Shown piece by piece: positions 2,677 to 53,237 of a stretch of 64,000 bases of DNA. The DNA comes from Paramoeba atlantica (lineage: Eukaryota > Protista > Discosea). How positions within the stretch are numbered: position 1 is the first letter of the stretch; each line of letters begins with the position of its first letter. The notes under the pieces are model-generated. The model was given only the letters and a program-made list of their open reading frames with translations. It was not told where the DNA came from and ran no database searches. The DNA lies in the NCBI GenBank assembly GCA_977017575.1, contig CDRNVI010000098.1, forward strand, positions 1 to 64,000, in the 5' to 3' direction. The position numbers and the translations under genes are program-made.

Positions 2677-3144
2677 TGTTTTATCATGCACTTATAGTGC
2701 AGAGATTTACTCACCATGTCCTTATCCCGCATACGACGGGTGGATCATGTGAGGTTTCGTCCTCGCCGGAGGTGTGCGGGTGCGGAGAGCTGGCGTCCCA
2801 GGTGCAGAGAGCTCGGTTGTCATGTGCAGGTGCAGAGAGCCGGATGCGTAATCCCCATATTACAGTTTCGGGGGCAATCCGGGTGCAGAGAGCTGCGACA
2901 GAGCCGAGGTGCGGAGAGCTGGGCGACCGCCAGGTGCAGAGAGCCGAGTCTCGTCGGCGGAGGACACGTCTAGTGGTCCTCAAGGGAGGCCACCGTGACG
3001 CATGGCCCTCTCGGAGAGGAAAAAGACAAGTCGAAAAAAGCCGAGAGGGGGAAGCACACTCACCCCAGGGGAGTGAGTCGGGGAGGGGTGAAGGGGTGAA
3101 AGCGCGTCCCCTGCTTCAGCGACAAGAGGGACAGTTCCGACCTT
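2677..3144 (-). mobile_element. Element X copy 1: non-coding structured SINE-like retroelement
   Basis: Near-identical to 33307-33775; interrupts an LRR reading frame; 3' CCCG-TCGTATG-CGGG hairpin shared with the LINE 3' UTR; ends GATAAAACA. Confidence 0.8.
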
Positions 3145-3147
3145 TTT

Positions 3148-3204
3148 AATTCAAATACAGATAATTCAATACAGATAATTTCAAATACAGATAATTCAAA
3201 TACA
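3148..3204. repeat. ~4 tandem copies of a ~15-nt target-derived unit (AATTCAAATACAGAT) at the X1 5' junction
   Basis: Read directly; on the minus strand the unit encodes the LRR segment YLNYL. Confidence 0.8.
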
Positions 3205-9125: not shown

Positions 9126-9180
9126 AATTAATATTTAATAATTTAATAAGTAAAAATACATAAGTAAATAATAAGTAAAT

Positions 9181-9909
9181 CTATTCATATATCACAATTT
9201 TCGTCTCCAAGAAGGATTGTGCAATTTGGAACTTTCCTCCAAGTTTAGGAGGCATTTTATCCAATATTACTCTACCTTCTAGGAGTTTGTTATCTCCCAA
9301 CTTGAGTGTAGAAAGATTTTCCGGGAGGTACGACAAGTCCACGCTTCCAACAAAATTATTTCCCTTCAGATACAAGCTTACTAGAGTAGCGGGAAGAGAC
9401 CGCAGGTCAATTGTCCCCGTCAAAAAATTGCTGCTGACGTCAAGGTATTTTAGACCAGGAGGCAATTGAGTAAGACACACGTCCCCTGATAATCTGTTAC
9501 TTTCCATCCATGCTGAAGTCATACGTCCGGGGAAAACAGTAAGATCTGGATTTCCTGTAAAAAGATTCCCACCGAGAAACAAACCAGCAAGATTTGAAAG
9601 CGGGGAGAGGTCACAAAGGTCGGTTCGTTCTCCAGACAGCGAGTTTTCTTCAATGTCAAACTCCGTAACGGAGCTCGGAATATGCACGAGCTTCAAGGAC
9701 CCACTCAGCTCTTCATGGTCCCATACTATTTCTGTGACCAGCATATCAGCGCTGCATGCTATACCTTTCCATTCACAAGCAGGTGTCAGTGAACTCCAAC
9801 TTTGGTGTTGCGGGTATATTCCACTAATGAGTCGTTCCATCCCCATCTCTTGCGGTAGATTTGAGCCAGAGACCTTGGCCGCACGCGACTTGTGTCTCAC
9901 GGAATCCAT
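9181..9909 (-). CDS. Short LRR protein (242 aa)
   Basis: SWSSLTPACEWKGIAC cap and ~6 LRR repeats. Confidence 0.85.
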   Translation of the reverse strand: MDSVRHKSRAAKVSGSNLPQEMGMERLISGIYPQHQSWSSLTPACEWKGIACSADMLVTEIVWDHEELSGSLKLVHIPSSVTEFDIEENSLSGERTDLCDLSPLSNLAGLFLGGNLFTGNPDLTVFPGRMTSAWMESNRLSGDVCLTQLPPGLKYLDVSSNFLTGTIDLRSLPATLVSLYLKGNNFVGSVDLSYLPENLSTLKLGDNKLLEGRVILDKMPPKLGGKFQIAQSFLETKIVIYE

Positions 9910-10429
9910 TGTAAAGTTCTACGAAATGGAGAAGAACAATTGTGAGAAAAAAAACTTCCTATTGTAGGTCCGGGGTCTCCTTTAACCCTGCTAAACCGGC
10001 CCAAATCCCGGGGGCTATGTAAACAAATACATAGAAAGGTGATTGAAGGATTTGTAACTTTATAAAAAGTGTAGGATGGAAAATTGTTTAGGGGTCCGAA
10101 AAACTTCAAAAACTATAGATATAGGACTTTATAGTACTATAATCTTTTTTTTGCTATATATTGACAAACTATATTAAATACAGAAAAATATTATTTTTCA
10201 CCGGAAGTTTGCGATTATCGAAGAGTGACAGAACATCTTTAATTAATTTTCTCTTGTTCAGTAAAATGTAAACCTTAGTGGTGTATTGCCTCAAATCTAA
10301 TCTTTTTGTGTCTATAGAGCTTCAAATCTTATTTTTCAGACCAAGTAGCCCAATATGGGAAACAACAAATTCAATGATGAGTCCCGAGATGCTTTCGTAT
10401 CATCACATTTCGCACCTGTTGCTGGGCAG

Positions 10430-14600: not shown

Positions 14601-14660
14601 TCATTGATGTTGAAATTTATTGCGGTCAATGCATAACCGGATTTCCTTATTTACGGAATT

Positions 14661-14927
14661 TCTTAATTTCGGTTCCTCTCTAATTACGGCTCCCCCTAAT
14701 TACGGTTTCTCTTTAATTACGGTTCCTCTTTAATTACGGTTCCTCTCTAATTACGGCTCCCCCTAATTACGGTTTCTCTCTAATTACGGTTCCTCTCTAA
14801 TTACGGTTCCTCTCTAATTACGGTTCCTCTCTAATTACGGTTCCTCTCTAATTACGGTTCCTCTCTAATTACGGTTCCTCTCTAATTACGGTTCCTCTCT
14901 AATTACGGTTTCTCTCTAATTACGGTT
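14661..14927. repeat. 17-bp minisatellite (TAATTACGGTTCCTCTC), ~15-16 units
   Basis: Read directly. Confidence 0.9.
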
Positions 14928-15004
14928 AACCGATTTAAGGTTAAAATTCTCGGCACTGGTGGAATAACCGTAAAACAGCGTTCCAAGGACCTGAAATCGC
15001 CGAT

Positions 15005-15193: not shown

Positions 15194-16082
15194 AAAATAA
15201 AGTCTCAATGATTTCCAGAAATGAAAATGTTAGAAATTTACACCATATTTACTCTACCTTTTTGGTCAAAAAAATTGGTCAATTTTTTTCGGACATTTTT
15301 TTTTCAAAACAGCACTATAAGTGTTCTAAATTGATATTTTGAAAGCTCTATGTCTAGTACCCTCTCTATTCCCTAGTTTTAGTAAACACCTCTACATTAT
15401 TAAGATCAGACCCTCTAACCCCAAACAGGGGGAGTACATAGAACGATGTAATATCAAAAGAGAAGACAACCCCACAATATGTGCAACACAATCTATTCCG
15501 TCCCTATTAGACTTCGAAACGTGTTGCAAAACAATGGAAGCCATTCCAGATACTACACCCCCCCTGCTTGCGAGTTCCCCCAATTCTGGTACGCTTATCA
15601 GTTCCTTTTTCTAAGGCGAATGTTTTTGTACCCCAAAAAGAATTTGTACCCACTTTTCGCGAAGCGATTTTTTTTGGACTGAACAAAAATTCATAATTTT
15701 CCCAACTATTGTACGTCAGGCTGCTGTACAGACTAGTTCTTTACCCTCATAGTTAACTTTTGGACACAAATTCCGTTTTTTGTTTCATTTTTCATAGGCA
15801 AAAAAATGTCATTTTTAATTTTGGTAAACTTTCGGGTCATCCATGGGGCACCTGGGGTCTATGAAAAAAAAGCGGCAATGCTCTTCGATAGGGGAACAAG
15901 ATCTCTCCAATGTGGCAAAGATGAGCAAAAACGGATATAGAAAATCAAAATTCCGAGGGGGGGCAAGATCAACTGAAACCACTGTACATCTGATACGCGA
16001 ACTAGAATGAGAAGTACGCGTATTTCAGTATACTGATATTATACGTAGGGACTACAGGTAAGGGGCCGCGGGAATAGAAAAA

Positions 16083-16748
16083 CTATTCATAAATCACAAT
16101 TTTCGTCTCCAAGAAGGATTGTGCAATTTGGAACTTTCCTCCAAGTTTAGGAGGCATTTTATCCAATATTACTCTACCTTCTAGGAGTTTGTTATCTCTT
16201 AACTTGAGTGTAGAAAGATTTTCCGGGAGGTACGACAAGTCCACGCTTCCAACAAAATTATTTCCCTTCAGATACAAGCTTACTAGAGTAGCGGGAAGAG
16301 ACCGCAGGTCAATTGTCCCCGTCAAAAAATTGCTGCTGACGTCAAGGTATTTTAGACCAGGAGGCAATTGAGTAAGACACACGTCCCCTGATAATCTGTT
16401 ACTTTCCATTCATGCTGAAGTCATACGTCTGGGGAAAACAGTAAGATCTGGATTTCCTGTAAAAAGATTCCCACCGAGAAACAAACCAGCAAGATTTGAA
16501 AGCGGGGAGAGGTCACAAAGGTCGGTTCGTTCTCCAGACAGCGAGTTTTCTTCAATATCAAACTCCATAACGGAGCTCCATAACGCAGCTTTGCATGCTA
16601 TACCTTTCCATTCACAAGCAGGTGTCAGTGAACTCCAACTTTGGTGTTGCGGGTGTATTCCACTAATGAGTCGTTCCAGCCCCATCTCTTGCGGTAGATT
16701 TGAGCCAGAGACCTTGGCCGCACGCGACTTGTGTCTCACGGAATCCAT
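16083..16748 (-). pseudogene. Near-identical paralog of LRR 9181-9909 with a ~60-bp deletion and TGG>TGA
   Basis: MTSA*MESNRL versus MTSAWMESNRL; KAALWSSV replaces ~28 residues. Confidence 0.85.
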
Positions 16749-17014
16749 TGTAAAGTTCTACGAAATGGAGAAGAACGATTGTCCGAAAAAACATATTGAA
16801 AGCTGTTATTTAAAAAGACTGTTTTACAAAATATTTTTTGTCGCGTGATAGGCTGATGTCAAAGAAAGTGCTCTATAATGGGAGCGAAGGACATTTTTGT
16901 TCGTTTGCAGAGTTAATGAGCAAACACATAAACAGATGTGGGACTGTAGATGTACATATCTGTATTCCAAAGGGGAACATAGATTAACTAAACAAAACGC
17001 TGTATAACCCATCA

Positions 17015-23379: not shown

Positions 23380-24106
23380 ATCGAAAAAAAAGTTTCTGAT
23401 GATCGCTTACTTAGTAATGCAGAAAATGCCGATCAGTAAGAACTAATACGTGATTTAAACTTTGTAGATTAGTACCCAGAATGTCCGCCGTCATTTTCTA
23501 ATTCGGAGTCTTTTGTGTTTAGGGTTTGTAGGTCTTGTTTTCATAGTTTCACAAAAGGGAAAAATGTACGTGAGGGATACAAATTTGCTAAACATCATGT
23601 TTTATATTCCATGAGAGCTCTAAGGAGCCATTAAGAAAGAAATGCAGCAAGGCTATTAGCTATAAGGACGAGATTCATCAAACGCGATTAAAACGAGAAA
23701 AAATGCAAAGGACATAATTTCATAAAACATAAAAAAATGCAAAAAAATGGGTGCGCTCCAGAAAAATGGTATCAAAAAACCATGTTTTTTGGACCTAGGG
23801 GGTCCCAGGGGGTCCCTATGAAAAAAAGGCGGCAAAGGCCTTCGCCAGGAAAACCTTCCCGACCCGTCTCCGAAACACACAACTCGCAGACAATTCAACA
23901 TCCCTTTTTGTTCTCCAAAATCAGAAAACCCTTCCTTTTAAGTAGTTCCGGAAGCATTCTCCAGTCGCTTCCGGTCCCCTAGAAAAAAGGTCGGGGTGTG
24001 TCCATTAGCTCAAACAATTTGGCACAGGATTGCAGGGGCGGGTTACATGGGTTCTAATGTCCCAGCCTTTATGGATGCTATCTTTAGCGTCCATAAAGTC
24101 TTTTGC

Positions 24107-26798
24107 GAGCGAACGCGGGCACAAATTAAGGAATGTCGCAAAGCGATCAAGCTGAGGGAGGAGGAAGCTACAATGCAACGCAGAGAACTAGGTGAAAGAT
24201 GGGCCGCACAGAGATTCTCTAGAAACTCGTGGACCGCGGCATCCGAAACGATTGATAAGCCTAACGGAAGAGAGGTAGAAAACACCGCATTTCCCAGCTG
24301 TGACAGATCTAGCATTGAATCATACTTTCAAGAAAGTTTTAACCCCAATGAGCAATCCTCGCGTCTCCCTCCTTCAGATCTACTAGGTCCGACAGCTAGC
24401 CAGCCAATGCAATGGAACCCGATCTCCCGTGAGGATGTCACTGCAGCTGTCACAATGAAGCGCAACGCCAGTTCTCCAGGAACCGACACGATAACTAACA
24501 AAATACTCAAAAACTGCCCATCGACACGCGAATACTTTGCATCTGTGTTCAACGATCTAATGACTTTCTCTGTGTGCCCGCTATCATGGAAAACCGCAGT
24601 AACCAGGCTGATATATAAAGCAGGTAGCAAAGAAAATCCGAAAAACTGGCGCCCGATCTCCCTTACTAGTGCTCTAGGTAAAACCTTTCACACGATCATC
24701 GCACATCGACTGACTCAACACCTGACTGAACACCATGTCATTGACCCTCAAATACAAAAAGGCTTTCTCCCTTCCATTAACGGTACACTGGAACACACCC
24801 AAACTCTTTGCTCACTCCTGCGACATTACCAGAAACACAAAACTCAATATTGCCTCGCACAACTCGACCTGAGCAATGCCTTCGGGTCTGTCCCACATCA
24901 TATCATACATGCCGCTCTGAAATGGGCCCAAGTACCGCCGGAGGTCATCCACTACATCAAAAATACCCTAACGGATGCGCACATGCGCATTAAGTGCTAC
25001 GAAGGTCTTACGCAACCTATCTCTATACGAAAAGGTGTCCTCCAAGGGGATACCCTCTCTCCTATTGTCTTCCTGATAGTGATGGAAATTGTTTTGCGAT
25101 ATGTCCGATTCTCCTGCCCGCACTTCGGTATGAAACTCCCAAACGGTCTGAACAACTTCCTTAAGGCTTTTGCTGATGACTTAACTATTCTTACTGAAAG
25201 CGACGGAGACATGCAACACGCACTTGATGCAGTTACCAAAGTGCTGGGCGAGCTAAGCCTTAAGATTAACGTGAACAAGAGTCGAATACAGTGCATGAGC
25301 ACCCGTAAAGGCGAGGAACATCCAGGCTATATGACAAGACGTCCGGAAATAAAAGTCTACGGAGAGACCATACCACACATATGTGATGTCGGTAGCACCT
25401 TCCTCGGGATGACCTTGGCACCGGGGTCCCAACAACTGAAAGAGCTGTTTCGTAAACTCGACTCAAAACTAAAACAGTGGATGGAGAACATCACACAAAG
25501 TGCCCACAGCCTTCCCGCTAAGCTTTTGATGTACAAAAATGCCGTTCTCTCACGTCTCCGTTTTCAGTTCGTTATTCACCCGTCGTTAATTTCACCCATC
25601 GTTATTCGGATCCGTGCTACGCCTTCAGAAGCGAGCCACGTCTCACATACGGAAATGGATAAACATGGCGCGTGCCGGAAGCTCTGAAGTCCTGTACTCT
25701 TGCCGAGGCTGGAACCTTACGAGTCTGTCAAAACTTTGGTACGAATGCACGGGAGAATCTATGACGCAAATGAACAAATCCAAAGATCCAAATGTCCTAC
25801 ATACACTTCGCATACGCATACAGGAAGAGCAACACAAACGTCAAAGAGGTCAAATACGACCCGCTACTTTAATTACAGAACATCTGGATGATCCCCGAAT
25901 GACTCGTCAACGGCTTCGTGAAGCACATGAGGAGGAAATAATCACGCGCTTGCAGCAACGCGCGCCCATCGCAGCCCTATGGTGGCAGTTTCCTACGGAT
26001 CCAGAAATGGCCCAAGAATTCGCTTCTGCCATAAATGGGATCCGGAATGCGAAGATCTCCCGCTTTGTAGCATCCGTCATGACTCTTACACCGCTCCCTT
26101 CCCGAGCAGCGCTTGTTCAATGGGGCCGCAGCACCTACAGTAACATGAAATGCCCTATTTGCAACGACCGAGTGCAAACCGTCAGACACACCCTTTCCGC
26201 CTGCACCACTTCACTTCAGCAAGGACGATATACTTTCCGTCATAACCTTGTCCTTGCCGAATTTGCGAAACATATTAGGGAAGCACAGGGAACTGAGTTT
26301 TCATATTTCGACCTACCAGGAGAGCGTAACCCACCAGCTTGGCTGAGGGAACACGATACACTGCTCCGTCCCGACGGTTACATTAAACTTCACAATGGGA
26401 CAGAGTTCCTCATCGAACTCACAGTCCCATGGGAGGAGAATGCGGAGAACGCTCATCGGAGAAAATCCGAGAAGTACAACATCCTTTTACATACACGGCG
26501 ACAGGAAAACCCGGACACCTACATAATAGCCTTTGAAATAGGTGCCCGGGGATTCCCCAATGGGTCATGCAAATATATTAATGCCATCTTTAACGGCGAC
26601 CATATTTTGGCCACAAAGTGTCGAGAAAGCATGACACAGATGGCCCTCAGGGGGAGTTACATACTCTGGGCTCGCCGAAATGAGGCGACATGGTCGGAGG
26701 AGGAAACGTATTGACATTGTCTTCTAAAAAGGGGGCAATCCCGTTGAATGCGGGTCATACCCCCGACTTACTCTACTGGAAAGTATGAAAAATAAAAA
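24107..26798 (+). mobile_element. 5'-truncated RLE-type non-LTR retrotransposon (HERO-like), copy 1
   Basis: RT motifs (NWRPISL, QKGF, DLSNAFGSVPH, GVLQGDTLSP, AFADDL), CPIC..HTLSAC knuckle, RHN, RPDG and ELTVPWE endonuclease; ends ATGAAAAATAAAAA. Confidence 0.92.
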
Positions 26799-26925
26799 TC
26801 TATTTACAGCTATTTCTACTTTGGGACCCTGCACTTTGTGACATGTTTTGGCATTTGTACGACGACTGTTTCACTCCTTTCGTAACGAACCTGCAACAGG
26901 CATCTCCATTTATTTTAAATACATT

Positions 26926-27510: not shown

Positions 27511-27844
27511 AATAGGAGCGAAGAACGTGTCATAATATTCTCGGGAGTGAACTCGGATGAATCAAGACTAGTTCTAGAACAAAAAACATTGCAATCGAAA
27601 TTCTCTCAATCGTTTTCCGTACATTGTGCTGCCCCGCACATAAATAAACTTATAAATGACTATGCAGTTTATCATACCCCCCGGTATTCTGCGAAAGTAC
27701 GGATACCTTATGTTAAATAGCACTATGTAATTGCTGATTAAGTTGATTTGATGATCATGCGCTCGTTGGCACAGATATAATTCCCCTATTGCGATGGCCG
27801 ATATCACCACGAAGGTCCACTCGGGCCCTACATTGGGTCCACTG

Positions 27845-32370: not shown

Positions 32371-33011
32371 TTGATGGAAAGTGCTCTCACTTTAGGTTTC
32401 CACCCAGATCGTACAAGGCCCATTGTATTTCATCGATGTTACCAGAGGAGCTTTGCATTGTTTTTATGCCATTCCACTCACATACAGGATCCTAACATTA
32501 TTCGAAATTCTTCATTATCAATAGCATTCTTACGTATGTATTTTATACGTTCTAACCCTCCTGTCTCCCGGTGGCGTTTAACCCATCGAGAGACAGTTGC
32601 TTCACTGCATTTCGTAAAAGCAGCACTGTCTGCAATCGAACGCCCCTGGTTTTGTATCTCATGGACGCAAAATACACGTGTTTCATAAGTGATTTGTTGC
32701 GTCCAGAAGGTGCGCCTCTGGCGGCGAAGTGTTTTCGGCATAAAATGGGTTAGAAAGAGTTAAATGGTATTTTATTCATAGTTTGATGCGCTAGAATGAC
32801 AAAAAATGATAAAAATCTGATTTTTTGCAGAATTTGTGGTTAAGAATTTCAGTAATTTATTCTCAAGTCGTCATATCTGCTTCAGGGGCGGCAACAATGG
32901 TGCCAGTAGTCTTAAAATTTCGTGATCTGTTGAATGCCGTAGGAATTAGGTCAAAAGCTCGCACGATACAAATTTTAGACCCCCTCCACCTTTTTCGTGA
33001 CCCCCCCTGTA
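32371..33011 (-). mobile_element. Truncated Tc1/IS630-like element (HTH N-terminus); 5' part duplicated at 39537-39880
   Basis: ORF 32478-32741 GRSIADSAAFTKCSEATVSRWVKRHRETG; candidate terminus TA-CAGGGGGGGTC at 33011. Confidence 0.55.
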
Positions 33012-33306
33012 TAGTAGCGATGCCGCATTTTATGCATACCCCCTTACTATTCGCAATAAAAAAAGTTAAGAACACGATCCTACGAATATTGAGACGGATA
33101 GGTTCGCGTAATAAATACGTTTCAAGACTCTTCTTGAATCCACGACGGAGGAATGTTCCACCATGCTCGAGTAGGCATGTGACTCGGGCTATTGTTCCAT
33201 TAAGCCCAGGATTCCCTGTTATGTCGAATCCAGCAACAGGCTTTGCAAGATTCGAGTGCACCAGACAGGAAAGATCCACAAATCCGGTGAATTGACAATT
33301 GGATAG

Positions 33307-33775
33307 TGTTTTATCATGCACTTATAGTGCAGAGATTTACTCACCATGTCCTTATCCCGCATACGACGGGTGGATCATGTGAGGTTTCGTCCTCGCCGGA
33401 GGTGTGCGGGTGCGGAGAGCTGGCGTCCCAGGTGCAGAGAGCTCGGTTGTCATGTGCAGGTGCAGAGAGCCGGATGCGTAATCCCCATATTACAGTTTCG
33501 GGGGCAATCCGGGTGCAGAGAGCTGCGACAGAGCCGAGGTGCGGAGAGCTGGGCGACCGCCAGGTGCAGAGAGCCGAGTCTCGTCGGCGGAGGACACGTC
33601 TAGTGGTCCTCAAGGGAGGCCACCGTGACGCATGGCCCTCTCGGAGAGGAAAAAGACAAGTCGAAAAAAAGCCGAGAGGGGGAAGCACACTCACTCCAGG
33701 GGAGTGAGTCGGGGAGGGGTGAAGTGGTGAAAGCGCGTCCCCTGCTTCAGCGACAAGAGGGACAGTTCCGACCTT
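33307..33775 (-). mobile_element. Element X copy 2
   Basis: Near-identical to 2677-3144; inserted in an LRR segment at GGATA^(CA)TTTAACAC. Confidence 0.8.
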
Positions 33776-33880
33776 AGTGCCGGCCGGCAACGGGCATGAA
33801 AATACAGTAAGAGTATGCCCGTTGCCGGGGAAAGAAAGGATGAACTAAGGAAAAAGTACCAACAAGGTACAGAAACTGTA
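33776..33880 (-). ncRNA. Spliced-leader RNA fragment (last 21 nt of exon plus ~84-nt putative intron)
   Basis: TACAGTTTCTGTACCTTGTTG|GTAC: euglenozoan SL core followed by a GT donor. GTACC-TTGTT-GGTAC stem spans the donor; 14-bp hairpin at 33784-33828. No clear Sm site seen. Confidence 0.65.
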
Positions 33881-34321
33881 GGTCATGATCATACGCTCGT
33901 GGCGCAGAGATACGTCTCTCTGTGTGACGGCCGATACCATCGGCGCATGACCCGCATACGACGGGTGTCACACAGAGAGTGGAGTGCGAGGTAGGAGACG
34001 AGACGCCCATCGGTCATGCTACAGCACGTATAGCCATGGTTCATGCTGCAACACGGTCAAGCCGTGGGTTCATGCTGTCAGATGGTCTATCGTGGATCAT
34101 GATGCATCATGGGGAGGTCCGTTACCGCCGCACTCGCTACAGCATGTAGGGAGAGAGGGGTGCAAGTTCGCATCCCCTATACACGCATACAACGTGTCCT
34201 CCCGCTGTAGCACGCCCAGTGGTCCTCAAGGGAGGCCACCATGGCGCATAGCTCCCGGGAGAAGAAAGCACGAGAAGGAGAGAGCCGGGCTTTAGCACAG
34301 CCGGGCTTTAGAGAGCCGGGC
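33881..34321 (-). mobile_element. Element Y: second structured SINE-like element related to X
   Basis: Shares CCCGCATACGACGGGTG and AGTGGTCCTCAAGGGAGGCCACC with X; otherwise dissimilar. Confidence 0.7.
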
Positions 34322-34381
34322 TTTAACACATCAATGTTGGGAGGTAAATGAGCAAAGTCCAGCTCGCCTGTGAATAAATTG

Positions 34382-37300
34382 TTTTTATTTTTTCATACTT
34401 TCCAGTAGAGTAAGTCGGGGGTATGACCCGCATTCAACGGGATTGCCCCCTTTTTAGAAGACAATGTCAATACGTTTCCTCCTCCGACCATGTCGCCTCA
34501 TTTCGGCGAGCCCAGAGTATGTAACTCCCCCTGAGGGCCATCTGTGTCATGCTTTCTCGACACTTTGTGGCCAAAATATGGTCGCCGTTAAAGATGGCAT
34601 TAATATATTTGCATGACCCATTGGGGAATCCCCGGGCACCTATTTCAAAGGCTATTATGTAGGTGTCCGGGTTTTCCTGTCGCCGTGTATGTAAAAGGAT
34701 GTTGTACTTCTCGGATTTTCTCCGATGAGCGTTCTCCGCATTCTCCTCCCATGGGACTGTGAGTTCGATGAGGAACTCTGTCCCATTGTGAAGTTTAATG
34801 TAACCGTCGGGACGGAGCAGTGTATCGTGTTCCCTCAGCCAAGCTGGTGGGTTACGCTCTCCTGGTAGGTCGAAATATGAAAACTCAGTTCCCTGTGCTT
34901 CCCTAATATGTTTCGCAAATTCGGCAAGGACAAGGTTATGACGGAAAGTATATCGTCCTTGCTGAAGTGAAGTGGTGCAGGCGGAAAGGGTGTGTCTGAC
35001 GGTTTGCACTCGGTCGTTGCAAATAGGGCATTTCATGTTACTGTAGGTGCTGCGGCCCCATTGAACAAGCGCTGCTCGGGAAGGGAGCGGTGTAAGAGGG
35101 AAGGGAGCGGTGTCATGACGGATGCTACAAAGCGGGAGATCTTCGCATTCCGGATCCCATTTATGGCAGAAGCGAATTCTTGGGCCATTTCTGGATCCGT
35201 AGGAAACTGCCACCATAGGGCTGCGATGGGCGCGCGTTGCTGCAAGCGCGTGATTATTTCCTCCTCATGTGCTTCACGAAGCCGTTGACGAGTCATTCGG
35301 GGATCATCCAGATGTTCTGTAATTAAAGTAGCGGGTCGTATTTGACCTCTTTGACGTTTGTGTTGCTCTTCCTGTATGCGTATGCGAAGTGTATGTAGGA
35401 CATTTGGATCTTTGGATTTGTTCATTTGCGTCATAGATTCTCCCGTGCATTCGTACCAAAGTTTTGACAGACTCGTAAGGTTCCAGCCTCGGCAAGAGTA
35501 CAGGACTTCAGAGCTTCCGGCACGCGCCATGTTTATCCATTTCCGTATGTGAGACGTGGCTCGCTTCTGAAGGCGTAGCACGGATCCGAATAACGATGGG
35601 TGAAATTAACGACGGGTGAATAACGAACTGAAAACGGAGACGTGAGAGAACGGCATTTTTGTACATCAAAAGCTTAGCGGGAAGGCTGTGGGCACTTTGT
35701 GTGATGTTCTCCATCCACTGTTTTAGTTTTGAGTCGAGTTTACGAAACAGCTCTTTCAGTTGTTGGGACCCCGGTGCCAAGGTCGTCCCGAGGAAGGTGC
35801 TACCGACATCACATATGTGTGGTATGGTCTCTCCGTAGACTTTTATTTCCGGACGTCTTGTCATATAGCCTGGATGTTCCTCGCCTTTACGGGTGCTCAT
35901 GCACTGTATTCGACTCTTGTTCACGTTAATCTTAAGGCTTAGCTCGCCCAGCACTTTGGTAACTGCATCAAGTGCGTGTTGCATGTCTCCGTCGCTTTCA
36001 GTAAGAATAGTTAAGTCATCAGCAAAAGCCTTAAGGAAGTTGTTCAGACCGTTTGGGAGTTTCATACCGAAGTGCGGGCAGGAGAATCGGACATATCGCA
36101 AAACAATTTCCATCACTATCAGGAAGACAATAGGAGAGAGGGTATCCCCTTGGAGGACACCTTTTCGTATAGAGATAGGTTGCGTAAGACCTTCGTAGCA
36201 CTTAATGCGCATGTGCGCATCCGTTAGGGTATTTTTGATGTAGTGGATGACCTCCGGCGGTACTTGGGCCCATTTCAGAGCGGCATGTATGATATGATGT
36301 GGGACAGACCCGAAGGCATTGCTCAGGTCGAGTTGTGCGAGGCAATATTGAGTTTTGTGTTTCTGGTAATGTCGCAGGAGTGAGCAAAGAGTTTGGGTGT
36401 GTTCCAGTGTACCGTTAATGGAAGGGAGAAAGCCTTTTTGTATTTGAGGGTCAATGACATGGTGTTCAGTCAGGTGTTGAGTCAGTCGATGTGCGATGAT
36501 CGTGTGAAAGGTTTTACCTAGAGCACTAGTAAGGGAGATCGGGCGCCAGTTTTTCGGATTTTCTTTGTTACCTGCTTTATATATCAGCCTGGTTACTGCG
36601 GTTTTCCATGATAGCGGGCACACAGAGAAAGTCATTAGATCGTTGAACACAGATGCAAAGTATTCGTGTGTCGATGGGCAGTTTTTGAGTATTTTGTTAG
36701 TTATCGTGTCGGTTCCTGGAGAACTGGCGTTGCGCTTCATTGTGACAGCTGCAGTGACATCCTCACGGGAGATCGGGTTCCATTGCATTGGCTGGCTAGC
36801 TGTCGGACCTAGTAGATCTGAAGGAGGGAGACGCGAGGATTGCTCATTGGGGTTAAAACTTTCTTGAAAGTATGATTCAATGCTAGATCTGTCACAGCTG
36901 GGAAATGCGGTGTTTTCTACCTCTCTTCCGTTAGGCTTATCAATCGTTTCGGATGCCGCGGTCCACGAGTTTCTAGAGAATCTCTGTGCGGCCCATCTTT
37001 CATCTAGATCTCTGCGTTGCATTGTAGCTTCCTCCTCCCTCAGCTTGATCGCTTTGCGACATTCCTTAATTTGTGCCCGCGTTCTCTCGCGTTCCGCCCG
37101 GTTCCTCGTGTAACGTAGCGATCGTTTCATCGTTTCTAAATGGTGTTTGAGATCGGTTACGGTTCTTTCCGCCGCGAGTGGTCGGTATCTACGTCGTGCA
37201 TGTCCGGTACTGGTCCTTATCAGGAAACCTTTCGTCGGATTTGCTTCTATGGCGACTTCATGTGCTGAGACTGCTAATGCGGCACTGAGTAATTCCGCGT

Positions 37301-39504
37301 TTCGTACAGCTGCCTCTTTATCCGGTGTAGGGGTAAGTAGTTGAATGCATCTCTCTTTCGCTCTCGATTCGACAATCCGCCACTGTACCTCATTTAGTCG
37401 TATCGTAACCTTACCTCCGCTTATGGCTTCGTGCTTCTGGAGAAGTTGCGTTTGCAATCTGGTTCGAGAGTAGGCTTCTTGCTCGGGGGAGGCAGGGTAC
37501 TCTGCAGCCGGAGGAGGGCTGTTCGGGTGCTGGATGGCTGCTGCATCGGTCTCTGAGTCTTCGGTGTCTCTTTGCGTAGTGTTCCTCCGGGCATACACTG
37601 GTCCGTATACTTTGCAGCACTTGTGGGCACATTCCACTTTGTTTCGACATGTGTGCTGACACGGGTGCAAACTAAGCTTCGTAGGTGCCCTACTGATAGT
37701 TTGGATGCGGTGAGGGGATGCTTCTCGGCGCGGGTTCTTTTCATAGTGTACGTCTGAGGGATCTTCCTCCCGCTTATGTAGTGTAATATGCAGATGTTGA
37801 AGGAGGGGCACATCCCGTCCGGCAAGAACCTTGAGGATTGCGCGGCCGAGTGCTCCCGCGGAGCTGTATGACTCACCAAGTTTGAAGGTATCATCTTTGT
37901 AGAGGGAAGTCCAGCTGGCGTGCCGTCGGTGTTCTTGCGCGTGCGCTTGTTTTACAACCCTTATGTAGTCACATCCCTGGTGATCCATGAGCTCGTCCAG
38001 TGAGGCTGGCTGAACAATTAGGTCGTGGGAGCTTCCGTTCCCTGAAAGCATTTTACTGAGTGCCGCTTGCGCTGCTTGATGAGAAGCAATTCTGGCCTTG
38101 ACTAGAGGGGATTCGCTGGCGGCCCGGACGTCTGGAAAATACCGCCAGGTGAGATCTGTGAGTGTTCTTATTTTTAAGGGGCGCGCCCGGCTTTGGACAA
38201 AATGAAGATTTTGTTTGTGTTGAAGCGATGCACTCAGTCCAGTAGGTGTTGTGGCGGCGTCATCTAGGTTTCCCGAGTGTTGGTTGTTGAACACCCAGGT
38301 GGGAACTTCGTCCGTGCTTTCTTCCAGTAGGATGTGATGGTCTACGGAGACGCTAGGTACCGGTAGTGGGGAAGGGAGGCGAGCGAGCACCTCGGGATAC
38401 AGAGATTCTGTATTTTGGTTTTCGTATCCAGGGATCTCGTCGTTTTTAGTGGCACTGCATGAGGTAGCTATCGAGGCGTCGTTTTTGCTGTCGCAGTTTG
38501 GTTGCTCGGGAGCGCGATTTTCAAGGTGCAATAGTGGATTCGTACAATTGGGTTCATCATTCTCTGCTTGTACATTATGCGCGCTTGGAGCTTTGGGGGT
38601 AAGGAAGTCTATGTACCAGAGAAAGATGCGTAGTGGTAATTTTACAAGTTCCAAAATGATGGTCGATGTTGATGTCTTCTTGGTCTTCGCAAGTAGCAAC
38701 CAAAGTTCATCGTATTTCCGTGAGACAGGCGTTTTGAAGTTGGAGAGGGTTAGATAGATCTGGTTGATTGCCACTGGAACTAGAGGTATGCTGCTTCGCA
38801 AAAGACTGAGCGCATACCATGTGAGTGCGAATATTAAGTGGACAAGTGTGCAGAATAGTTTCATGAGGTACTTCACGTTATGAAATAGTATTGCAACCTT
38901 GAGGGTCTGCTCCGTGTAGGGGTTGCTCGTTTGATCTGGAGTAGTGTGTACTAAGTGGCGTTTGCAGCAGGCATGCTTGCATGTGTTTTTGTTTAGACAT
39001 TTATGTTTACATGGCTTCGTTTGAGGTGGTTCTGTAGAGTTTCAGCAATATGCAGGTTGGGTTACGAAGTAGGGTATTTTCATGAATATTGTCGCCAGTA
39101 ATGCTTCGATGATGCAATATACTCTCCCGAAGAATCTCGGTGGGGTGCTTATATTCGTCAAGTTCGGTGCTGTAGGAATATCGATTTTGTTTATGCGAGG
39201 CTGTTGCCTCTTACAACACGGGTGAAGACATGTTCGTTTGTTGAGGCACCTGTGTTTACATGGTGTTCCGTGGGTCATGGGGGTTTGCGGTACCATATTT
39301 GCAGTCACTAGTTCGGTTGGCGTGACGCATGATGGTGGTTCGGAGGGGGCACCATTCTCGTCGACGGGACGTCCATGGTCTAAGAGATCAACGGTTGACA
39401 TATCAACGCCGCGTGGTCCTCCCGTAAGGTCCTGCGGCGCATCAGCATGAGTGCAATGTGAAGGGGGTCGCGTCATTGTAACGATAAAGATAAGAGAAAA
39501 AAAA
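34382..39504 (-). mobile_element. Full-length RLE-type non-LTR retrotransposon (HERO-like), copy 2
   Basis: ATG at 39476; in-frame TGA at 39042-39044; Cys/His fingers; RT (ORF 35508-38876); frameshifts; RLE (34467-35216); 3' tail identical to copy 1. Confidence 0.92.
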
Positions 39505-39536
39505 CAACAAGGTACAGAAACTGTATCTTTATCGTT
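39505..39536 (-). other. SL exon at the 5' end of LINE copy 2
   Basis: AACGATAAAGATACAGTTTCTGTACCTTGTTG; last 21 nt identical to 33860-33880; not followed by GT. Confidence 0.8.
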
Positions 39537-40237
39537 CAAATTACACGTGTTTCATAAGTGATTTGTTGCGTCCAGAAGGTGCGCCTCTGGCGGCGAAGTG
39601 TTTTCGGCATAAAATGGGTTAGAAAGAGTTAAATGGTATTTTATTCATAGTTTGATGCGCTAAAATGACAAAAAATGATAAAAATCTGATTTTTTGCAGA
39701 ATTTGTGGTTAAGAATTTCAGTAATTTATTCTCAAGTCGTCATATCAGCTTCAGGGGCGGCAACAATGGTGCCAGTAGTCTTAAAATTTCGAGATCTGTT
39801 GAATGCCGTAGGAATTAGGTCAAAAGCTCGCACGATACAAATTTTAGACCCCCTCCACCTTTTTCGTGACCCCCCCTGTATAGTAGCGATGCCGCATTTT
39901 ATGCATACCCCCCTACTATTCGCAATAAAAAAAGTTAAGAACACGATCCTACGAATATTGAGACGCATAGGTTCGCGTAATAAATACGTTTCAAGACTCT
40001 TCTTGAATCCACGACGGAGGAATGTTCCACCATGCTCGAGTAGGCATGTGACTGCGGGCTATTGTTCCATTAAGCCCAGGATTCCCTGTTATGTCGAATC
40101 CAGCAACAGGCTTTGCAAGATTCGAGTGCACCAGACAGGAAAGATCCACAAATCCGGTGAATTGACAATTGGATACATTTAACACATCAATGTTGGGAGG
40201 TAAATGGGCAAAGTCCAGCTCTCCTGTGAATAAATTG
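39537..40237. repeat. Right copy of the ~700-bp direct repeat
   Basis: See 32668-34381. Confidence 0.85.
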
Positions 40238-40602
40238 TTTTGAACCCACAAGTTCAGCAAAAGTTCAGGCAGGGCTGAGAAGTCAACATCGCCACCCAAC
40301 TGATTCGTCATCACCCGGGCTCGTTGTATCGTACGCGGTAAATACAGCCAATGTAATGATCCTTTCAGCGCACGTGAATACCAGCTTACTTCGCTTATAC
40401 TTTTAGATTCGTCACATTCCACACCGTTCCACTCGCAGGCAGGCGTATGCGTATCCCACGAGGGGTGCGGGTTCCTAACATCACGGACAAATTTAGCAAG
40501 TTCGTATTCCTGCGGCAGAGCAACGCCCTTTACCTTACCTGGGCGCGCTGCTGGGGGTGTAGCGTCGGCTGCCTCACACAATAGGAGCGAAGAACGTGGC
40601 AT
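39991..40602 (-). CDS. Short LRR protein (subfamily 2), intact
   Basis: Paralog of 22505 and 26926. Confidence 0.8.
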   Translation of the reverse strand: MPRSSLLLCEAADATPPAARPGKVKGVALPQEYELAKFVRDVRNPHPSWDTHTPACEWNGVECDESKSISEVSWYSRALKGSLHWLYLPRTIQRARVMTNQLGGDVDFSALPELLLNLWVQNNLFTGELDFAHLPPNIDVLNVSNCQFTGFVDLSCLVHSNLAKPVAGFDITGNPGLNGTIARSHMPTRAWWNIPPSWIQEES

Positions 40603-49828: not shown

Positions 49829-50902
49829 TTAAAAAGGTACAAAACAGGCCACCAAACAAAGGAAAACACTTGCGAGCATCCAAAAAAGCGAACCCCAAAG
49901 CGAGCTGGACGTCCCGAGCTCAGCTTCCGTTTCCCCTTCCTCCACTGACATCGATTTTTCCTCTTGCATCCTCTGCGGGGTGCGTTTTCCAATAAAAGGT
50001 CCATGGAGACTTCCTCCCAAGCCATCCATTCCGGCATAAAAGGGGGAACTCCCTGCTTCCTCCCCCAGTGCGCTCGAAGAGGTCCATCGGCGTAGAAACT
50101 GAGACGCGGAGTAGGACAGCGGGGAGGTATACGCACTTGCGGCATTCACCACGCACTGCCCCGTGCGCTCACTGTTGCTACAGACCCGGATGCCGACCAC
50201 AGACACCGCAGAGCTCTCGAGCGGACGGTTCTCGTTTTGGAAGCACGCAACGGTGTGCGGGTTGGTCCCAGAGCGCTCTTCATCGGAGGCCGTTTTCCCG
50301 GTCTGATTTTTAGCTTCCTCCTTGGAGGTTCCACCTTCCTCCTGCGCACGCTCCGCCTCCCCTGTTGGAAACGCTTTCGAGGAGCGTGGAAGCGCTGAGT
50401 GGGCATAGTACCCCTCCGCCGATAAATCGTTCATGTCCATCGAGGTCGAGTGTCGTGTCCTGTGAAGCTGCAAATCCCCTTTGGGGAGGAGACGCTTACT
50501 CACAAACGGGTTGCCCACCATAATCAGTTTCCCTCGCGGCATATGCCAGCACGGGGACTTCTCCGAAATCTCGTTAAACGACAAGTCAATGAGCCGCGCA
50601 GGAGGCGTGGGGAGTTTCGAAAAAGGCGTTTCCCCCCTCTCTGAGGACCCATAAAACTCCGAGCGATACCCCACCCTACTCACCCCTCGCTCCAGCCACC
50701 CTTTTCTCGAAAACAACGGCCACTTTGTCAGTTTGTTCTGCGCCATGTCAATCTTCACCACACTCTCCGGGAGCTCTGAAAAATCAACCTCCGTCGGAAC
50801 CTCCTCCTCCCCACTCCCCTCCCCATTCGTCAAAAACAACCCCGGCTCTCGACAATGCTCATTAAAACACAACCCCCGGGGAACCGGCCGAAACGGCACC
50901 AC
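49829..50902 (-). CDS. LRR-containing protein with C-terminal TM; probably the 3' part of a longer frameshifted gene
   Basis: VDFSELPESVVKIDMAQNKL, RLIDLSFNEI; terminal hydrophobic helix. Confidence 0.5.
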   Translation of the reverse strand: MVPFRPVPRGLCFNEHCREPGLFLTNGEGSGEEEVPTEVDFSELPESVVKIDMAQNKLTKWPLFSRKGWLERGVSRVGYRSEFYGSSERGETPFSKLPTPPARLIDLSFNEISEKSPCWHMPRGKLIMVGNPFVSKRLLPKGDLQLHRTRHSTSMDMNDLSAEGYYAHSALPRSSKAFPTGEAERAQEEGGTSKEEAKNQTGKTASDEERSGTNPHTVACFQNENRPLESSAVSVVGIRVCSNSERTGQCVVNAASAYTSPLSYSASQFLRRWTSSSALGEEAGSSPFYAGMDGLGGSLHGPFIGKRTPQRMQEEKSMSVEEGETEAELGTSSSLWGSLFWMLASVFLCLVACFVPF

Positions 50903-51103
50903 GCCTCCCCCCTCCCCCCCCTCCTCCCCCCCCCTCCCTCCCCCCCGGCCTCACCGAAAACGTCAAATACCCCGCAACCCTCCGCGTCGTCTCCCCCGCA
51001 AACGTCACCGTCACCCTCACATACCCCTGTCCCCGCGTCAACGGGGCCAAATCCCTCCCCCGTACCCGTCTCACCCGCGCCCGTGGACACCGTCCCAGGT
51101 GTC

Positions 51104-53102
51104 TTACCCCCCCACCCCCCCCTCCCCCCCCCCTCCCCCCCCCTGTCTCCGTCGTCTCGGCGAGACGTGCACCACGCGCAGCCCCCCGAGGAACCCGTTC
51201 ACCTTCGCCAGCCCCGTGACCGCGTCCCGGAGGTAGGCCTCGCACCGCGGGATCCCCCCCGGGGGCTCGACCCGGACCCAGGGGACGCCGCGGAGCTCGA
51301 GGCAGGCGGCCCCGCGGAGGGAGACGGCGGTGAGGTCGAGGATGGCGCGGTGGGTGGGGGGGGCGTGGGTGAGGGGGCAGAGGAAGGCGTGGTCGAGGGT
51401 GGCGGGGGCGGCGCGGGGGGCGTAGCCGGGGCGGAAGGCGTGGCTGAGGTTGAGGAGGCGGAGGGCGCGGGGGGGGGAGGGGGGGGCGAGGGGGGAGGCG
51501 AGCGCGTTGGCGCTGAGGTCGCAGATGTCGGTGGCGGGGGGGAGGAGGCCGAGGTCGAGGGGGGGGCGGGGGGCGGGGGTGGGGGGGGCGCTCGTTCGGT
51601 GCATGGGGGGGAGGGGGGGGATTGCGTTCCTTTGGGACATGTTGAGGATTTCGTTCCTTTGGGGCATGTTGAGGATTTCGTTCCTTTCGCGCATGTTGTG
51701 CATTTTGCGGGTGTTGTGCATTTCGCTCATTTTGTGCATTTCGTGCATTTTGTGCCTTTTGCGGATTTTGGGCATTTTGTGCATTTTGTGCCTTTTGCGG
51801 ATTTGAAGATTTTGCTGTGCTTCTTTGGGTTTCGTTTTGGGTTTCGTTTTGGTTTTGGCTTTGGTTTTAGATTGCGATGCCTCTGAGGTGGGTGGGGGTT
51901 AGGGAAGGGGAAGGGGAAGGGGAAGAAGCTGCGGATGAACGGGAAGAGGGTGATGCGGAGGCGTGGGTTGTGCTTACCCTTCGAGGATAGGTCGTGAGGG
52001 TACAGATGGGGGAGGGAGTTTCCGAGGGCGGGGGGTCGTATTGGGGATGAGGTTGGGAGAGGTAGGCAGGCCATGGGGGGGTACCGGGGGCGGAGAGGGT
52101 GGCGCTGGCATTCATCATCTCTTTTGTGGTTCCGGTGGTGGGGGGTTGATGGCCTCGTCGTCGCTGTTGTTGTTCATAGATGGCACGTCGGTAGGACCCG
52201 CTGAGGTCGAGGGCATAGGAGAGATGCACCCAGAGCACGACTAGACCGGTAGGGGCGTCGGAGGGGTTTTTTCCCATGGCGTACTCGCTGGAGCTTCGTC
52301 GACGGTAGGTCGTGGGGGAATGGCCGTTGTCGGTGGTGTGCTGCGCAGTACCGCTATGGGCGTGATGTTGTGGCATCCCGGCTTCCTCCCCCTTCTCCCA
52401 GTGATGGGTAATATCCTCACTTGGTGTATTCAACGGCGAACGCTGAAGTGTCCACCCGCGACGTGTGGCGAAACGGGACGTTAGCGCGGCTTCGTTGGGG
52501 TTGATGCGCGCAACGGTGAGGGAGTACAATGAGGCAATCTGTTCCTGTGGAATGAGCTGGGCATGGGTGAGAATGTACTCCTCTTTGCCCGGGACGGGGC
52601 TACTTCCTGCCCCCGAAGGTCCATAGAAACTGGTCGATCCTGTGGTTTTTGAAGGCCTTCCACTCTCGGAAGGATGTCGCCGACTTCCTGTAGGCGTAGT
52701 TCGCGATGAGGAGAAACTCCCATGTTGGCGTTCTCCTTTTGGGGGATGCGCTCGTCGTTCGACACTTCGCGAGCGCCCGGATTTGATGGAATTCGGATTC
52801 TTATGGGGAGTGCTTGGGGGAGACTCGTTCGCGCCCGGATTTGCGCACGAACCAGCCATCGTCCCACAGGCGTCTCTTCTCGTTGGCGTGATTGGGAGCG
52901 AAAATCGGAATCTCCAGCCGATGAGTCGGGGGCAATGGTTCTTGTGGCATAGAGGCAAAGGAGAGCGTATTGTTCTTGGGAGAAAACTGTCCAAAAGAGG
53001 GAAACGACGAAGCCCCATGCATCGGATGGGGTGCCGAATGTGCCGCACTCGGCCGGCCAAACGCATTTTGCCCGCTGTGTAACAATACCATTCGTGGATC
53101 AT
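51104..53102 (-). CDS. Fragmented hypothetical/LRR-like coding region (ORFs 51104-51784 and 51867-53102)
   Basis: CDLSANAL, LLNLSH and ILDLT patches; breaks fall near G/C homopolymers. Confidence 0.35.
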
Positions 53103-53237
53103 TAGGGGAGGACAGTGTCGCGCCAGCGGAGCCTGTCGGGTTAATCAAGTGTGCTTTTTCCGCTGCGTTCTGCACCCCCATCTCCTCTAAATCCAACGCC
53201 TCCCGTACCCATCGCAGCACCGGATCCTCCCATGACG

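What the first reader, a model, noticed from the sequence alone, without database searches (positions are those of the whole stretch)
26740..26798. LINE and elements X/Y share a 3' recognition hairpin (LINE-SINE partnership)
Seen: sense-strand CCCG-TYGWATG-CGGG lies 44-70 nt from the 3' end in both LINE copies (26740-26754, 34426-34440), both X copies (2726-2740, 33356-33370) and Y (33951-33965). LINE and Y also share the following TCAT. Established: stringent LINEs mobilise SINEs that share their 3' stem-loop. Inference: X and Y are non-autonomous partners of this HERO-like LINE. Unlike trypanosomatid RIME/SIDER elements, they show no other obvious LINE-derived sequence.
Basis: partly seen in the sequence, partly recalled or inferred. 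Interest (0 to 1): 0.8.

Follow-up and report, generated by a model that had tools for sequence, protein, structure and literature searches.

The report
Hitchhiker retroposons sharing a LINE's tail
Two short non-coding mobile elements in this spliced-leader-using protist end in the same folded RNA tail as a family of R2-like jumping genes, so they most likely borrow that family's copying enzyme; the principle is known from other organisms, but I found no report of it for this kind of jumping gene in kinetoplastids.

Summary
CCCG-N7-CGGG occurs five times in the window (0.79 expected), each 46-66 nt from the 3' end of a LINE copy, an X copy or Y. The hairpin is one part of a larger tail. An outer helix encloses hairpin 1. 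Then come CTCT, a second hairpin and AUGA. Nine LINE lineages of the same genome (40-70% protein identity) and at least six short-element subfamilies carry this tail. Both hairpins covary (0 of 500 shuffles). A covariance model hits only element 3' ends.

X is a true retroposon. Five copies end at the same nucleotide in unrelated flanks, 5' ends are variably truncated, and there are no terminal inverted repeats. LINEs and short elements often land in the same small LRR genes.

- Partnership with this R2-like (restriction-like endonuclease) LINE family is well supported.
- Partnership with the window's own LINE is not. That LINE is frameshifted, and X's tail is closer to another lineage.
- "No other LINE-derived sequence" is wrong. 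The elements also share a 28-nt spliced-leader head and a ~40-nt 5' box.
- "HERO-like" was not tested.

RT binding to the tail is inferred, not shown. This scan already noted the same partnership on overlapping DNA of this genome (s1-377382).

The parts
26740..26754 (+). Hairpin 1 (CCCG-TTGAATG-CGGG) in the 3' UTR of LINE copy 1
   Evidence: MFE fold
26731..26769 (+). Outer helix GGGGG/CCCCC enclosing hairpin 1, LINE copy 1
   Evidence: MFE; equivalent outer helices with different sequences in the other tails folded and read
26771..26806 (+). CTCT + hairpin 2 + ATGA + short A-rich end: the 3' terminus of LINE copy 1
24105..26806 (+). LINE copy 1, 5'-truncated (from about residue 621), with a frameshift near 25605-25615
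34375..39536 (-). LINE copy 2, full length (RT, CCHC, restriction-like endonuclease). It has the same frameshift plus a 13-14-nt indel at 35098. The 3' end is ambiguous within 34375-34386
34427..34441 (-). Hairpin 1 of LINE copy 2
39505..39532 (-). 28-nt spliced-leader-derived head at the 5' end of LINE copy 2
39396..39451 (-). 5' box (GCGCC..GACCTT-ACGG-GAGGACC..GGCG) of LINE copy 2, just after a conserved ATG
2677..3144 (-). X copy 1, 5'-truncated (lacks about the first 115 nt), inside an LRR gene in the gene's orientation
2726..2740 (-). Hairpin 1 (CCCG-TCGTATG-CGGG) of X copy 1
33307..33880 (-). X copy 2, nearly full length. Its head starts at position 8 of the 28-nt leader piece (33860-33880)
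33356..33370 (-). Hairpin 1 of X copy 2
33885..34321 (-). Y, a 5'-truncated relative of the S_L006 subfamily with its own central module
33951..33965 (-). Hairpin 1 of Y, inside a 13-bp outer helix together with a second small hairpin
34182..34196 (-). Second, internal hairpin-1-like motif in Y (CACG-TTGTATG-CGTG), just after Y's 5' box
34202..34257 (-). 5' box in Y
33586..33641 (-). 5' box in X copy 2 (the same box lies at about 2956-3011 in X copy 1)
27746..27843 (-). Degenerate, 5'-truncated tail fragment of an S_L006-type short element
   Evidence: E = 0.084
40175..40178 (.). Empty-site paralogue of the X2+Y insertion. The 1016-bp block replaces CA, with no target duplication

Best explanation
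X and Y are non-coding, non-autonomous retroposons. They are copied into the genome by the reverse transcriptase and endonuclease of a family of R2-like LINEs in the same genome.

The likely basis is a structured RNA at the 3' end that LINEs and short elements share. An outer helix encloses hairpin 1 (stem NNCG/CGNN; a 7-nt loop starting with U and mostly ending with G). A single-stranded (A)AUCUCU follows, then hairpin 2, AUGA and a few A-rich bases with no poly(A). By analogy with R2 and other 'stringent' LINEs, the LINE protein would bind this tail and start target-primed reverse transcription at its end.

The short elements also share two 5' features with the LINEs: a 28-nt spliced-leader-derived head and a ~40-nt box. 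So they resemble R2 SIDE elements (non-autonomous copies that keep both LINE ends) more than classical Pol III SINEs.

Shown here: the shared covarying structure, the retroposon anatomy and the overlapping target preference. Inferred: protein binding to the tail and trans-mobilisation. The helper is a member of the LINE family, not necessarily the frameshifted subfamily in this window.
For: Chance and position:
- The motif occurs 5 times against 0.79 expected, always near element 3' ends.
- tblastn marks the ORF end in nine LINE lineages. Each is followed within about 70-150 nt by the same two-hairpin tail.

Structure:
- Hairpin 1: 13 sequences, 92% paired, pair 2 seen as CG, GC, AU and UA, 10 double-change cells, 0/500 shuffles.
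- Hairpin 2: 14 sequences, 92% paired, 24 double-change cells, 0/500 shuffles.
- All eight tails folded on their own give the same architecture, with z from -1.6 to -3.7.
- Covariance model R1 gives 18 hits in 141 kb on both strands, all at element ends. Two were not in the training set. Five more lie at the tails of the new X/S6 loci.

Retroposon anatomy:
- Five X copies end at the identical nucleotide in unrelated flanks.
- Their 5' ends start at 0, 7, ~35, ~115 and ~133 nt into the element.
- Copies are 90-99.8% identical. There are no terminal inverted repeats.
- In read contigs the summed word depth is 20-50 times higher over X/Y than over the unique flank. The tool warns this is not a copy number; many distinct contigs were laid there.

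LINE and targets:
- The LINE protein aligns with solved R2 proteins through RT, the CCHC knuckle and the endonuclease.
- LINE_win2, LINE_L007 and LINE_L008 sit in small LRR genes. So do X1, X2+Y, X_L012, S6_L012 and S_L008a/b. All lie within about 15 nt of the same phase of the LRR unit. LRR DNA makes up only 10.7% of the window.
Against: - There is no direct evidence of RNA-protein binding or of mobilisation in trans.
- No RNA data were available, because the runs were held as contigs only.
- Hairpin 2 was part of the pattern that found three of the short elements, so its pairing there is partly ascertained. Hairpin 1 was not used for selection.
- The sequences are related by descent, so the shuffle controls overstate significance.
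- No LINE tail in hand is near-identical to X's or Y's (best 74% and 64%), so the actual helper is unidentified.
- Three of six X copies are not in recognisable LRR genes.
- LINE_L004 lacks a clear hairpin 1 at the aligned position.
Confidence: 0.72

Rival explanations
1. The shared tail is only a relic of common descent. X and Y arose from LINE RNAs by deletion or recombination and kept the tail. They now spread by other means, such as segmental duplication or another RT like an ingi-type LINE, and the hairpins play no role in recognition.
For: The short elements share 5' and 3' pieces with the LINEs, so common descent is certain. The region holds large duplications of about 705 bp and about 6.9 kb. 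No binding data exist.
Against: Base pairing is kept through compensatory changes both within the short-element subfamilies and between them and the LINEs. That argues for continued selection on the structure. Five X copies have identical 3' ends, unrelated flanks and different 5' truncation points. Duplication does not produce that pattern. There is no poly(A) tail of the kind an APE-type LINE with relaxed recognition would use.
Confidence: 0.12
2. The conserved tail is an RNA-processing or stability signal. It would serve 3'-end formation of transcripts cut out of polycistronic units, or protection from decay. Any retroposed RNA in this organism would need it, and it would not be the RT's recognition site.
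For: The most invariant parts are single-stranded (CUCU, AUGA) and lie at the very end. The elements have no poly(A) and carry a spliced-leader piece, which points to host mRNA processing.
Against: The model found the signal only at ends of this element family in 155 kb, not at host gene ends. R2-type enzymes are known to need their own 3' UTR structure (background knowledge; R2 SIDE paper PMC3414825, abstract). The two roles are not mutually exclusive.
Confidence: 0.1
3. The match between the window LINE and X/Y is a chance resemblance of short GC-rich palindromes.
For: The core is only 8 paired bases, and the LINE and X/Y loops differ at 2 of 7 positions.
Against: The motif occurs 5 times against 0.79 expected. 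The position relative to the 3' end is the same, and so is the downstream CTCT-hairpin-ATGA. The same holds in 9 LINE and 6 short-element lineages.
Confidence: 0.02

Closest known systems
R2 SIDEs (short internally deleted elements that parasitise R2; Eickbush & Eickbush 2012, PMC3414825)
   Same: Both are non-autonomous partners of a LINE with a restriction-like endonuclease. Both keep the LINE's 5' and 3' RNA ends and land at the LINE's kind of target. The 3' end is the part the LINE protein needs to start TPRT.
   Different: SIDEs are simple internal deletions, carry an HDV-like ribozyme and sit in 28S rDNA. Here the central modules are unrelated to the LINE and differ between subfamilies. 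No ribozyme family was detected. The 5' end is a spliced-leader piece, and targets are LRR genes and other sites.
Stringent LINE-SINE pairs that share a 3' stem-loop (for example eel UnaL2/UnaSINE1; from my own knowledge, not read here)
   Same: The short element carries the LINE's conserved 3' stem-loop and short terminal sequence instead of poly(A).
   Different: Those LINEs use an APE endonuclease, and the SINE heads are Pol III genes such as tRNA. Here no tRNA, 7SL, 5S or snRNA head is present and the LINE is R2-like.
Trypanosomatid RIME / NARTc / SIDER (partners of ingi/L1Tc; PMC12278014, PMC5814959)
   Same: These are also kinetoplastid non-autonomous retroposons that share terminal sequence with a LINE.
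   Different: They are truncated ingi-clade (APE-type) elements with the Pr77 5' hallmark and poly(A) tails. The review PMC12278014 lists non-autonomous elements only for the INGI clade and none for CRE.
CRE-clade LINEs (SLACS, CZAR, CRE1/2)
   Same: These are kinetoplastid single-ORF LINEs with RT and a restriction-like endonuclease. CZAR and SLACS insert between nt 11 and 12 of the miniexon (PMC5814959). The 28-nt head here would correspond to nt 12-39 of a 39-nt leader.
   Different: The copies seen here are not in spliced-leader gene arrays. The leader piece sits at the 5' end of the element, not as its 3' flank. Clade membership was not tested by phylogeny.

Membership tests
LINE-dependent non-autonomous retroposon (SINE in the broad sense / SIDE-like) | Precise 3' end shared among copies, in unrelated flanks | tested here: met
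   X1, X2, X_L009, X_L010 and X_L011 all end ...GCATGATAAAACA. A second Y copy ends at 33885.
LINE-dependent non-autonomous retroposon (SINE in the broad sense / SIDE-like) | Variable 5' truncation among copies | tested here: met
   X copies start at about 0, 7, 35, 115 and 133 nt of the full-length element.
LINE-dependent non-autonomous retroposon (SINE in the broad sense / SIDE-like) | 3' tail homologous to that of an autonomous LINE in the same genome | tested here: met
   Alignments A2, A3, A4 and A7; model R1.
LINE-dependent non-autonomous retroposon (SINE in the broad sense / SIDE-like) | No coding capacity of its own | tested here: inconclusive
   The only long ORF in X is antisense. 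Its 11 database relatives all come from ENA records, and the four looked up lie in this same assembly. None but one weak partial match carries a Pfam domain. Y was not searched.
LINE-dependent non-autonomous retroposon (SINE in the broad sense / SIDE-like) | Mobilised in trans by the LINE protein | not testable with these tools
   Needs TPRT, binding or retrotransposition assays.
Classical SINE (Pol III head) | 5' head derived from tRNA, 7SL, 5S or snRNA with an internal Pol III promoter | tested here: not met
   ARAGORN finds no tRNA. Rfam finds nothing at gathering scores in the window, nor at E <= 1 over X2/Y. The head is a 28-nt spliced-leader piece.
DNA transposon / MITE (the refuting alternative) | Terminal inverted repeats and a fixed target duplication | tested here: not met
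   No inverted repeat joins the element termini. The X2+Y block replaces 2 bp with no duplication. Flanks of six X copies show no common duplication.
R2-like LINE with restriction-like endonuclease | RT followed by a CCHC knuckle and a PD-(D/E)XK endonuclease in one protein | tested here: met
   P0007 residues 682-1459 align with R2 proteins 9nl3 and 9dou (E about 1e-29), including the Cys/His knuckle and the D..E..K block. RVT_1 and zf-RVT match in Pfam.
The best named relatives are R2 proteins.
CRE clade (SLACS/CZAR/CRE) | Insertion into spliced-leader RNA genes between nt 11 and 12 | tested here: not met
   The copies seen sit in LRR genes, in other LINEs or in unrelated DNA. They do begin with what would be nt 12-39 of the leader (site from PMC5814959).

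The most novel reading that the evidence does not exclude
A whole guild of retroposons in this free-living kinetoplastid uses one modular RNA 'handle' system. The modules are a leader-derived 28-nt head, a 5' box and a two-hairpin 3' tail. Non-coding elements would swap handles among diverging R2/CRE-like LINE lineages (partner switching). The shared machinery would preferentially hit one phase of the repeat unit in a family of small LRR genes, making the elements a built-in source of variation in that gene family.
Probability: 0.25. Interest if true: 0.75.

Novelty: new variant of a known kind. Interest (0 to 1): 0.55.

Why it matters
LINE-SINE partnership through a shared 3' RNA structure is established for APE-type 'stringent' LINEs. 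For R2 it is known only as simple deletion derivatives in rDNA. Here a diversified family of R2-like LINEs and several families of non-coding riders share a covarying two-hairpin tail, together with a leader-derived head and a 5' box.

This gives a natural mutational series of at least 15 different tails. From it one can read which features an R2-type enzyme recognises. R2 enzymes are also being developed for gene insertion.

In kinetoplastids, the one survey I read (PMC12278014) lists non-autonomous retroposons only for the ingi clade. A rider of the endonuclease-bearing, spliced-leader-associated LINEs would be new, and it comes with an apparent preference for a family of small LRR genes.

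Tried and rejected
- Rfam at gathering scores on the window and at E <= 1 on X2/Y, plus ARAGORN: nothing. The elements have no tRNA, 7SL, 5S or snRNA head, no known ribozyme and no known LINE 3' element.
- MAFFT plus RNAalifold on whole 106-nt tails recovered only hairpin 2, because the spacer between the hairpins varies. I then aligned the two hairpins separately and built a covariance model.
- Hammerhead or HDV-like ribozyme in X (GACGAAAC and the GGCCUCCC box): considered by eye, with no support from Rfam.
- Read laying: all runs are contigs, so there is no evidence on RNA, strand or ends. The 'skips 1016' joint at 33305/34322 is explained by the paralogous empty copy at 40175-40178 in the same genome. 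It is not evidence of a presence/absence polymorphism.
- The idea that the leader-plus-hairpin piece between Y and X2 is a separate spliced-leader RNA retrocopy joined by template switching: rejected for that piece. The same head is attached to X in L009 and L011 and to four related subfamilies. Whether it descends from the leader RNA's intron remains open.
- LINE copy 1's flank read as an LRR codon string: not confirmed by BLAST. That copy lies between two LRR genes, not inside one.
I redid it by coordinates.

Full report
**Observation.** CCCG-N7-CGGG occurs five times in the 64-kb window, against 0.79 expected by dinucleotide shuffling. On the sense strand of each element the loop is TTGAATG in the LINE and TCGTATG in X and Y. 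The hairpin lies 46-66 nt from the 3' end in every case.

**Anatomy of the window.**
- A self-comparison shows LINE copy 1 at 24105-26806 (+, 5'-truncated) and LINE copy 2 at about 34380-39536 (-, full length). They are 99-100% identical and have different 3' flanks.
- X copies lie at 2677-3144 and 33307-33880 (-). Y lies at 33885-34321 (-).
- X2+Y form a 1016-bp block that replaces two bases (CA) of a small LRR gene. The intact paralogue is at 40175-40178.
- LINE copy 2 sits 64 bp away in the same gene. It is flanked by a ~705-bp duplication of the target (32668-33305 plus 34322-34385, against 39537-40241).
- The host looks like an intron-poor, spliced-leader-using protist. Earlier notes of this scan call it a free-living kinetoplastid.

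**The LINE.**
- Its RT ORF has close relatives (40-70% identity), all from one ENA assembly. I fetched eight loci.
- Three relatives are intact single ORFs of 1417-1501 residues.
- P0007 aligns over residues 682-1459 with solved R2 proteins (9nl3, 9dou). The alignment covers the RT, the Cys/His knuckle and the D..E..K endonuclease block. So this is an R2-like LINE with a restriction-like endonuclease.
- 'HERO-like' was not tested.
- Both window copies share a frameshift between RT and endonuclease, and copy 2 has a further 13-14-nt indel.

**The tail is a family-wide structure.**
- tblastn fixed the ORF end in nine LINE lineages. Each is followed within about 70-150 nt by the same design: an outer helix enclosing hairpin 1 (sometimes with a second small hairpin), then (A)ATCTCT, hairpin 2, ATGA and a few bases. 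There is no poly(A), and sometimes a microsatellite follows.
- X, Y and further short elements (S_L006, S_L008a, S_L008b, S_L005, S6_L012) have the same design.
- Hairpin 1 (13 sequences): 92% of cells pair. The second pair occurs as CG, GC, AU and UA, and no shuffle of 500 reaches the observed covariation.
- Hairpin 2 (14 sequences): 92% paired, 24 double-change cells, 0/500 shuffles. Caveat: hairpin 2 was part of my search pattern for three short elements. Hairpin 1 was not.
- Independent thermodynamic folds of eight tails all return this architecture.
- A covariance model of the two hairpins found 18 matches in 141 kb on both strands, all at element 3' ends. Two were not used to build it. 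It found five more in four new loci.
- A relaxed hairpin-1 pattern gives 21 hits against 8.7 expected. Fourteen are at tails, one is inside Y, and the six others are scattered, about what the shuffles predict.

**X and Y are retroposons.**
- An antisense pseudo-ORF in X led to four more X loci.
- Five copies end at exactly ...GCATGATAAAACA in unrelated flanks. Their 5' ends start at about 0, 7, 35, 115 and 133 nt of the full-length element. This is the pattern of target-primed reverse transcription.
- There are no terminal inverted repeats and no constant target duplication.
- Contigs of public runs put far more summed word depth on X/Y than on the unique flank or the LINE. The tool warns that this is not a copy number, but many distinct contigs were laid there.
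- No tRNA, 7SL, 5S, snRNA or ribozyme family matches, so these are not classical Pol III SINEs.

- All nine LINE lineages and all full-length short elements begin at the same 28 nt, ATAAAGATACAGTTTCTGTACCTTGTTG. This is the 3' part of a kinetoplastid-type spliced leader.
- The piece between Y and X2 is therefore X's own head. The same head is attached to X in L009 and L011.
- A ~40-nt box (GCGCC..GRCCTYCCTYGAGGACC..GGCG) lies 117-134 nt from the 5' end in 8 of 9 LINE lineages, just after a conserved ATG. It lies 270-330 nt into X and its full-length relatives, and 87 nt into the 5'-truncated Y.
- The box is mostly conserved in sequence, with a few compensatory changes.
- Having both ends in common recalls R2 SIDEs (PMC3414825).

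**Targets.**
- Small LRR genes cover 10.7% of the window.
- Three LINE copies sit in such genes: LINE_win2, LINE_L007 and LINE_L008.
- Six short-element insertions do too: X1, X2+Y, X_L012, S6_L012, S_L008a and S_L008b.
- All lie 6-11 codons upstream of the G in the N-x-F/L-T/S-G motif of a repeat unit.
- Three other X copies and LINE copy 1 do not. The preference is real but not strict. It is what one expects if the riders use the LINE's endonuclease.

**Which LINE is the helper?** Over the two hairpin blocks, X is 74% identical to the LINE_L002 tail and 54% to the window LINE. Y is 64% to the window LINE and 62% to L002. The window LINE's loop TTGAATG recurs exactly in S_L008b and S_L005, not in X or Y. 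The helper of X and Y is therefore a family member that I have not identified.

**Mechanism.** Shown: the shared covarying tail, the retroposon anatomy and the overlapping targets. Inferred from what is known of R2 and of stringent LINE-SINE pairs: the LINE protein binds the tail and primes reverse transcription at its end, so riders carrying the tail are copied in trans. Head-to-tail trains (Y-X2; LINE_L008-S_L008a; S6_L012-X_L012; a contig joint) could arise in two ways. The RT could jump between templates, as R2 RT is known to do (background knowledge), or new copies could insert at resident heads. I could not separate these.

**Comparison and novelty.** The principle is known. New here are an R2-like LINE family with many diverged lineages, riders with unrelated central modules, a leader-derived head and LRR-gene targeting. 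A 2025 survey of trypanosomatid mobile elements lists non-autonomous elements only for the ingi clade (PMC12278014). CZAR and SLACS insert between nt 11 and 12 of the miniexon (PMC5814959). The 28-nt head would be nt 12-39 of a 39-nt leader, which is a striking but unexplained coincidence.

**Earlier notes and limits.** This scan had already noted the partnership on overlapping DNA of this genome (s1-377382). My tests were run independently and agree with it.

Noticed in passing
window 32668-33305 + 34322-34385 versus 39537-40241: LINE copy 2 is flanked by a ~705-bp direct duplication of its target (98.9% identical). The X2+Y block is present in only one of the two copies. In L008 a similar but shorter (~60 bp) target duplication seems to flank LINE_L008+S_L008a.
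   Followed up: partly
window 39505-39532 (-); also L001-L012 heads: Every LINE lineage and every full-length short element starts at the same 28 nt of the spliced leader, never further upstream. If the leader is 39 nt, this is nt 12-39. CZAR and SLACS insert exactly between nt 11 and 12 (PMC5814959). I have no explanation for why the elements start there.
   Followed up: partly
window 3147-3204 and 34279-34330: Both 5' junctions of the truncated short elements carry a ~15-nt unit repeated 3-4 times in tandem: 15 nt x 3.9 at X1 and 15/16 nt x 3.1 at Y. This may be a footprint of how the 5' end of the cDNA is joined.
   Followed up: partly
window 25605-25615 and 35580-35590; 35098: Both LINE copies share one frameshift between RT and endonuclease, yet are 99-100% identical and sit at different sites. 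Either a defective LINE was itself copied in trans, or the shift is read through. Copy 2 has an extra 13-14 nt that other copies in read contigs lack.
   Followed up: partly
window 34182-34196 (-): Y holds a second, internal hairpin-1-like motif (CACG-TTGTATG-CGTG) directly after its 5' box. Relative to CCCG/CGGG it carries a compensatory change.
   Followed up: no
window 2777-2946 (-) and 33407-33576 (-): X's body repeats the motif GCTCTCTGCACC about six times. The motif resembles the conserved AUCUCUGCAC at the start of hairpin 2 in the tail.
   Followed up: no
L002 7345-7385; L004 7690-7765; L007 4885-4900: Several LINE copies end in a microsatellite instead of poly(A): (TA)n, (TG)n and (ATC)n. 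In L004 a short piece of an S_L006-type body lies between the tail and (TG)n.
   Followed up: no
window 2400-58695, 15 blocks: The window holds about 14 small LRR genes or fragments (LRRNT_2-type N-terminus, about 200-240 residues), all on the minus strand. They include a ~6.9-kb duplication (9170-9952 versus 16073-16791).
   Followed up: partly
window 14645-14961: A tandem array of a 17-nt unit (CTAATTACGGTTCCTCT, about 17 copies).
   Followed up: no
window 50000-54000: A G+C-rich island (0.57-0.63, against about 0.44 elsewhere) with long overlapping ORFs on both strands (50855-51886 + and 51104-51784 -).
   Followed up: no
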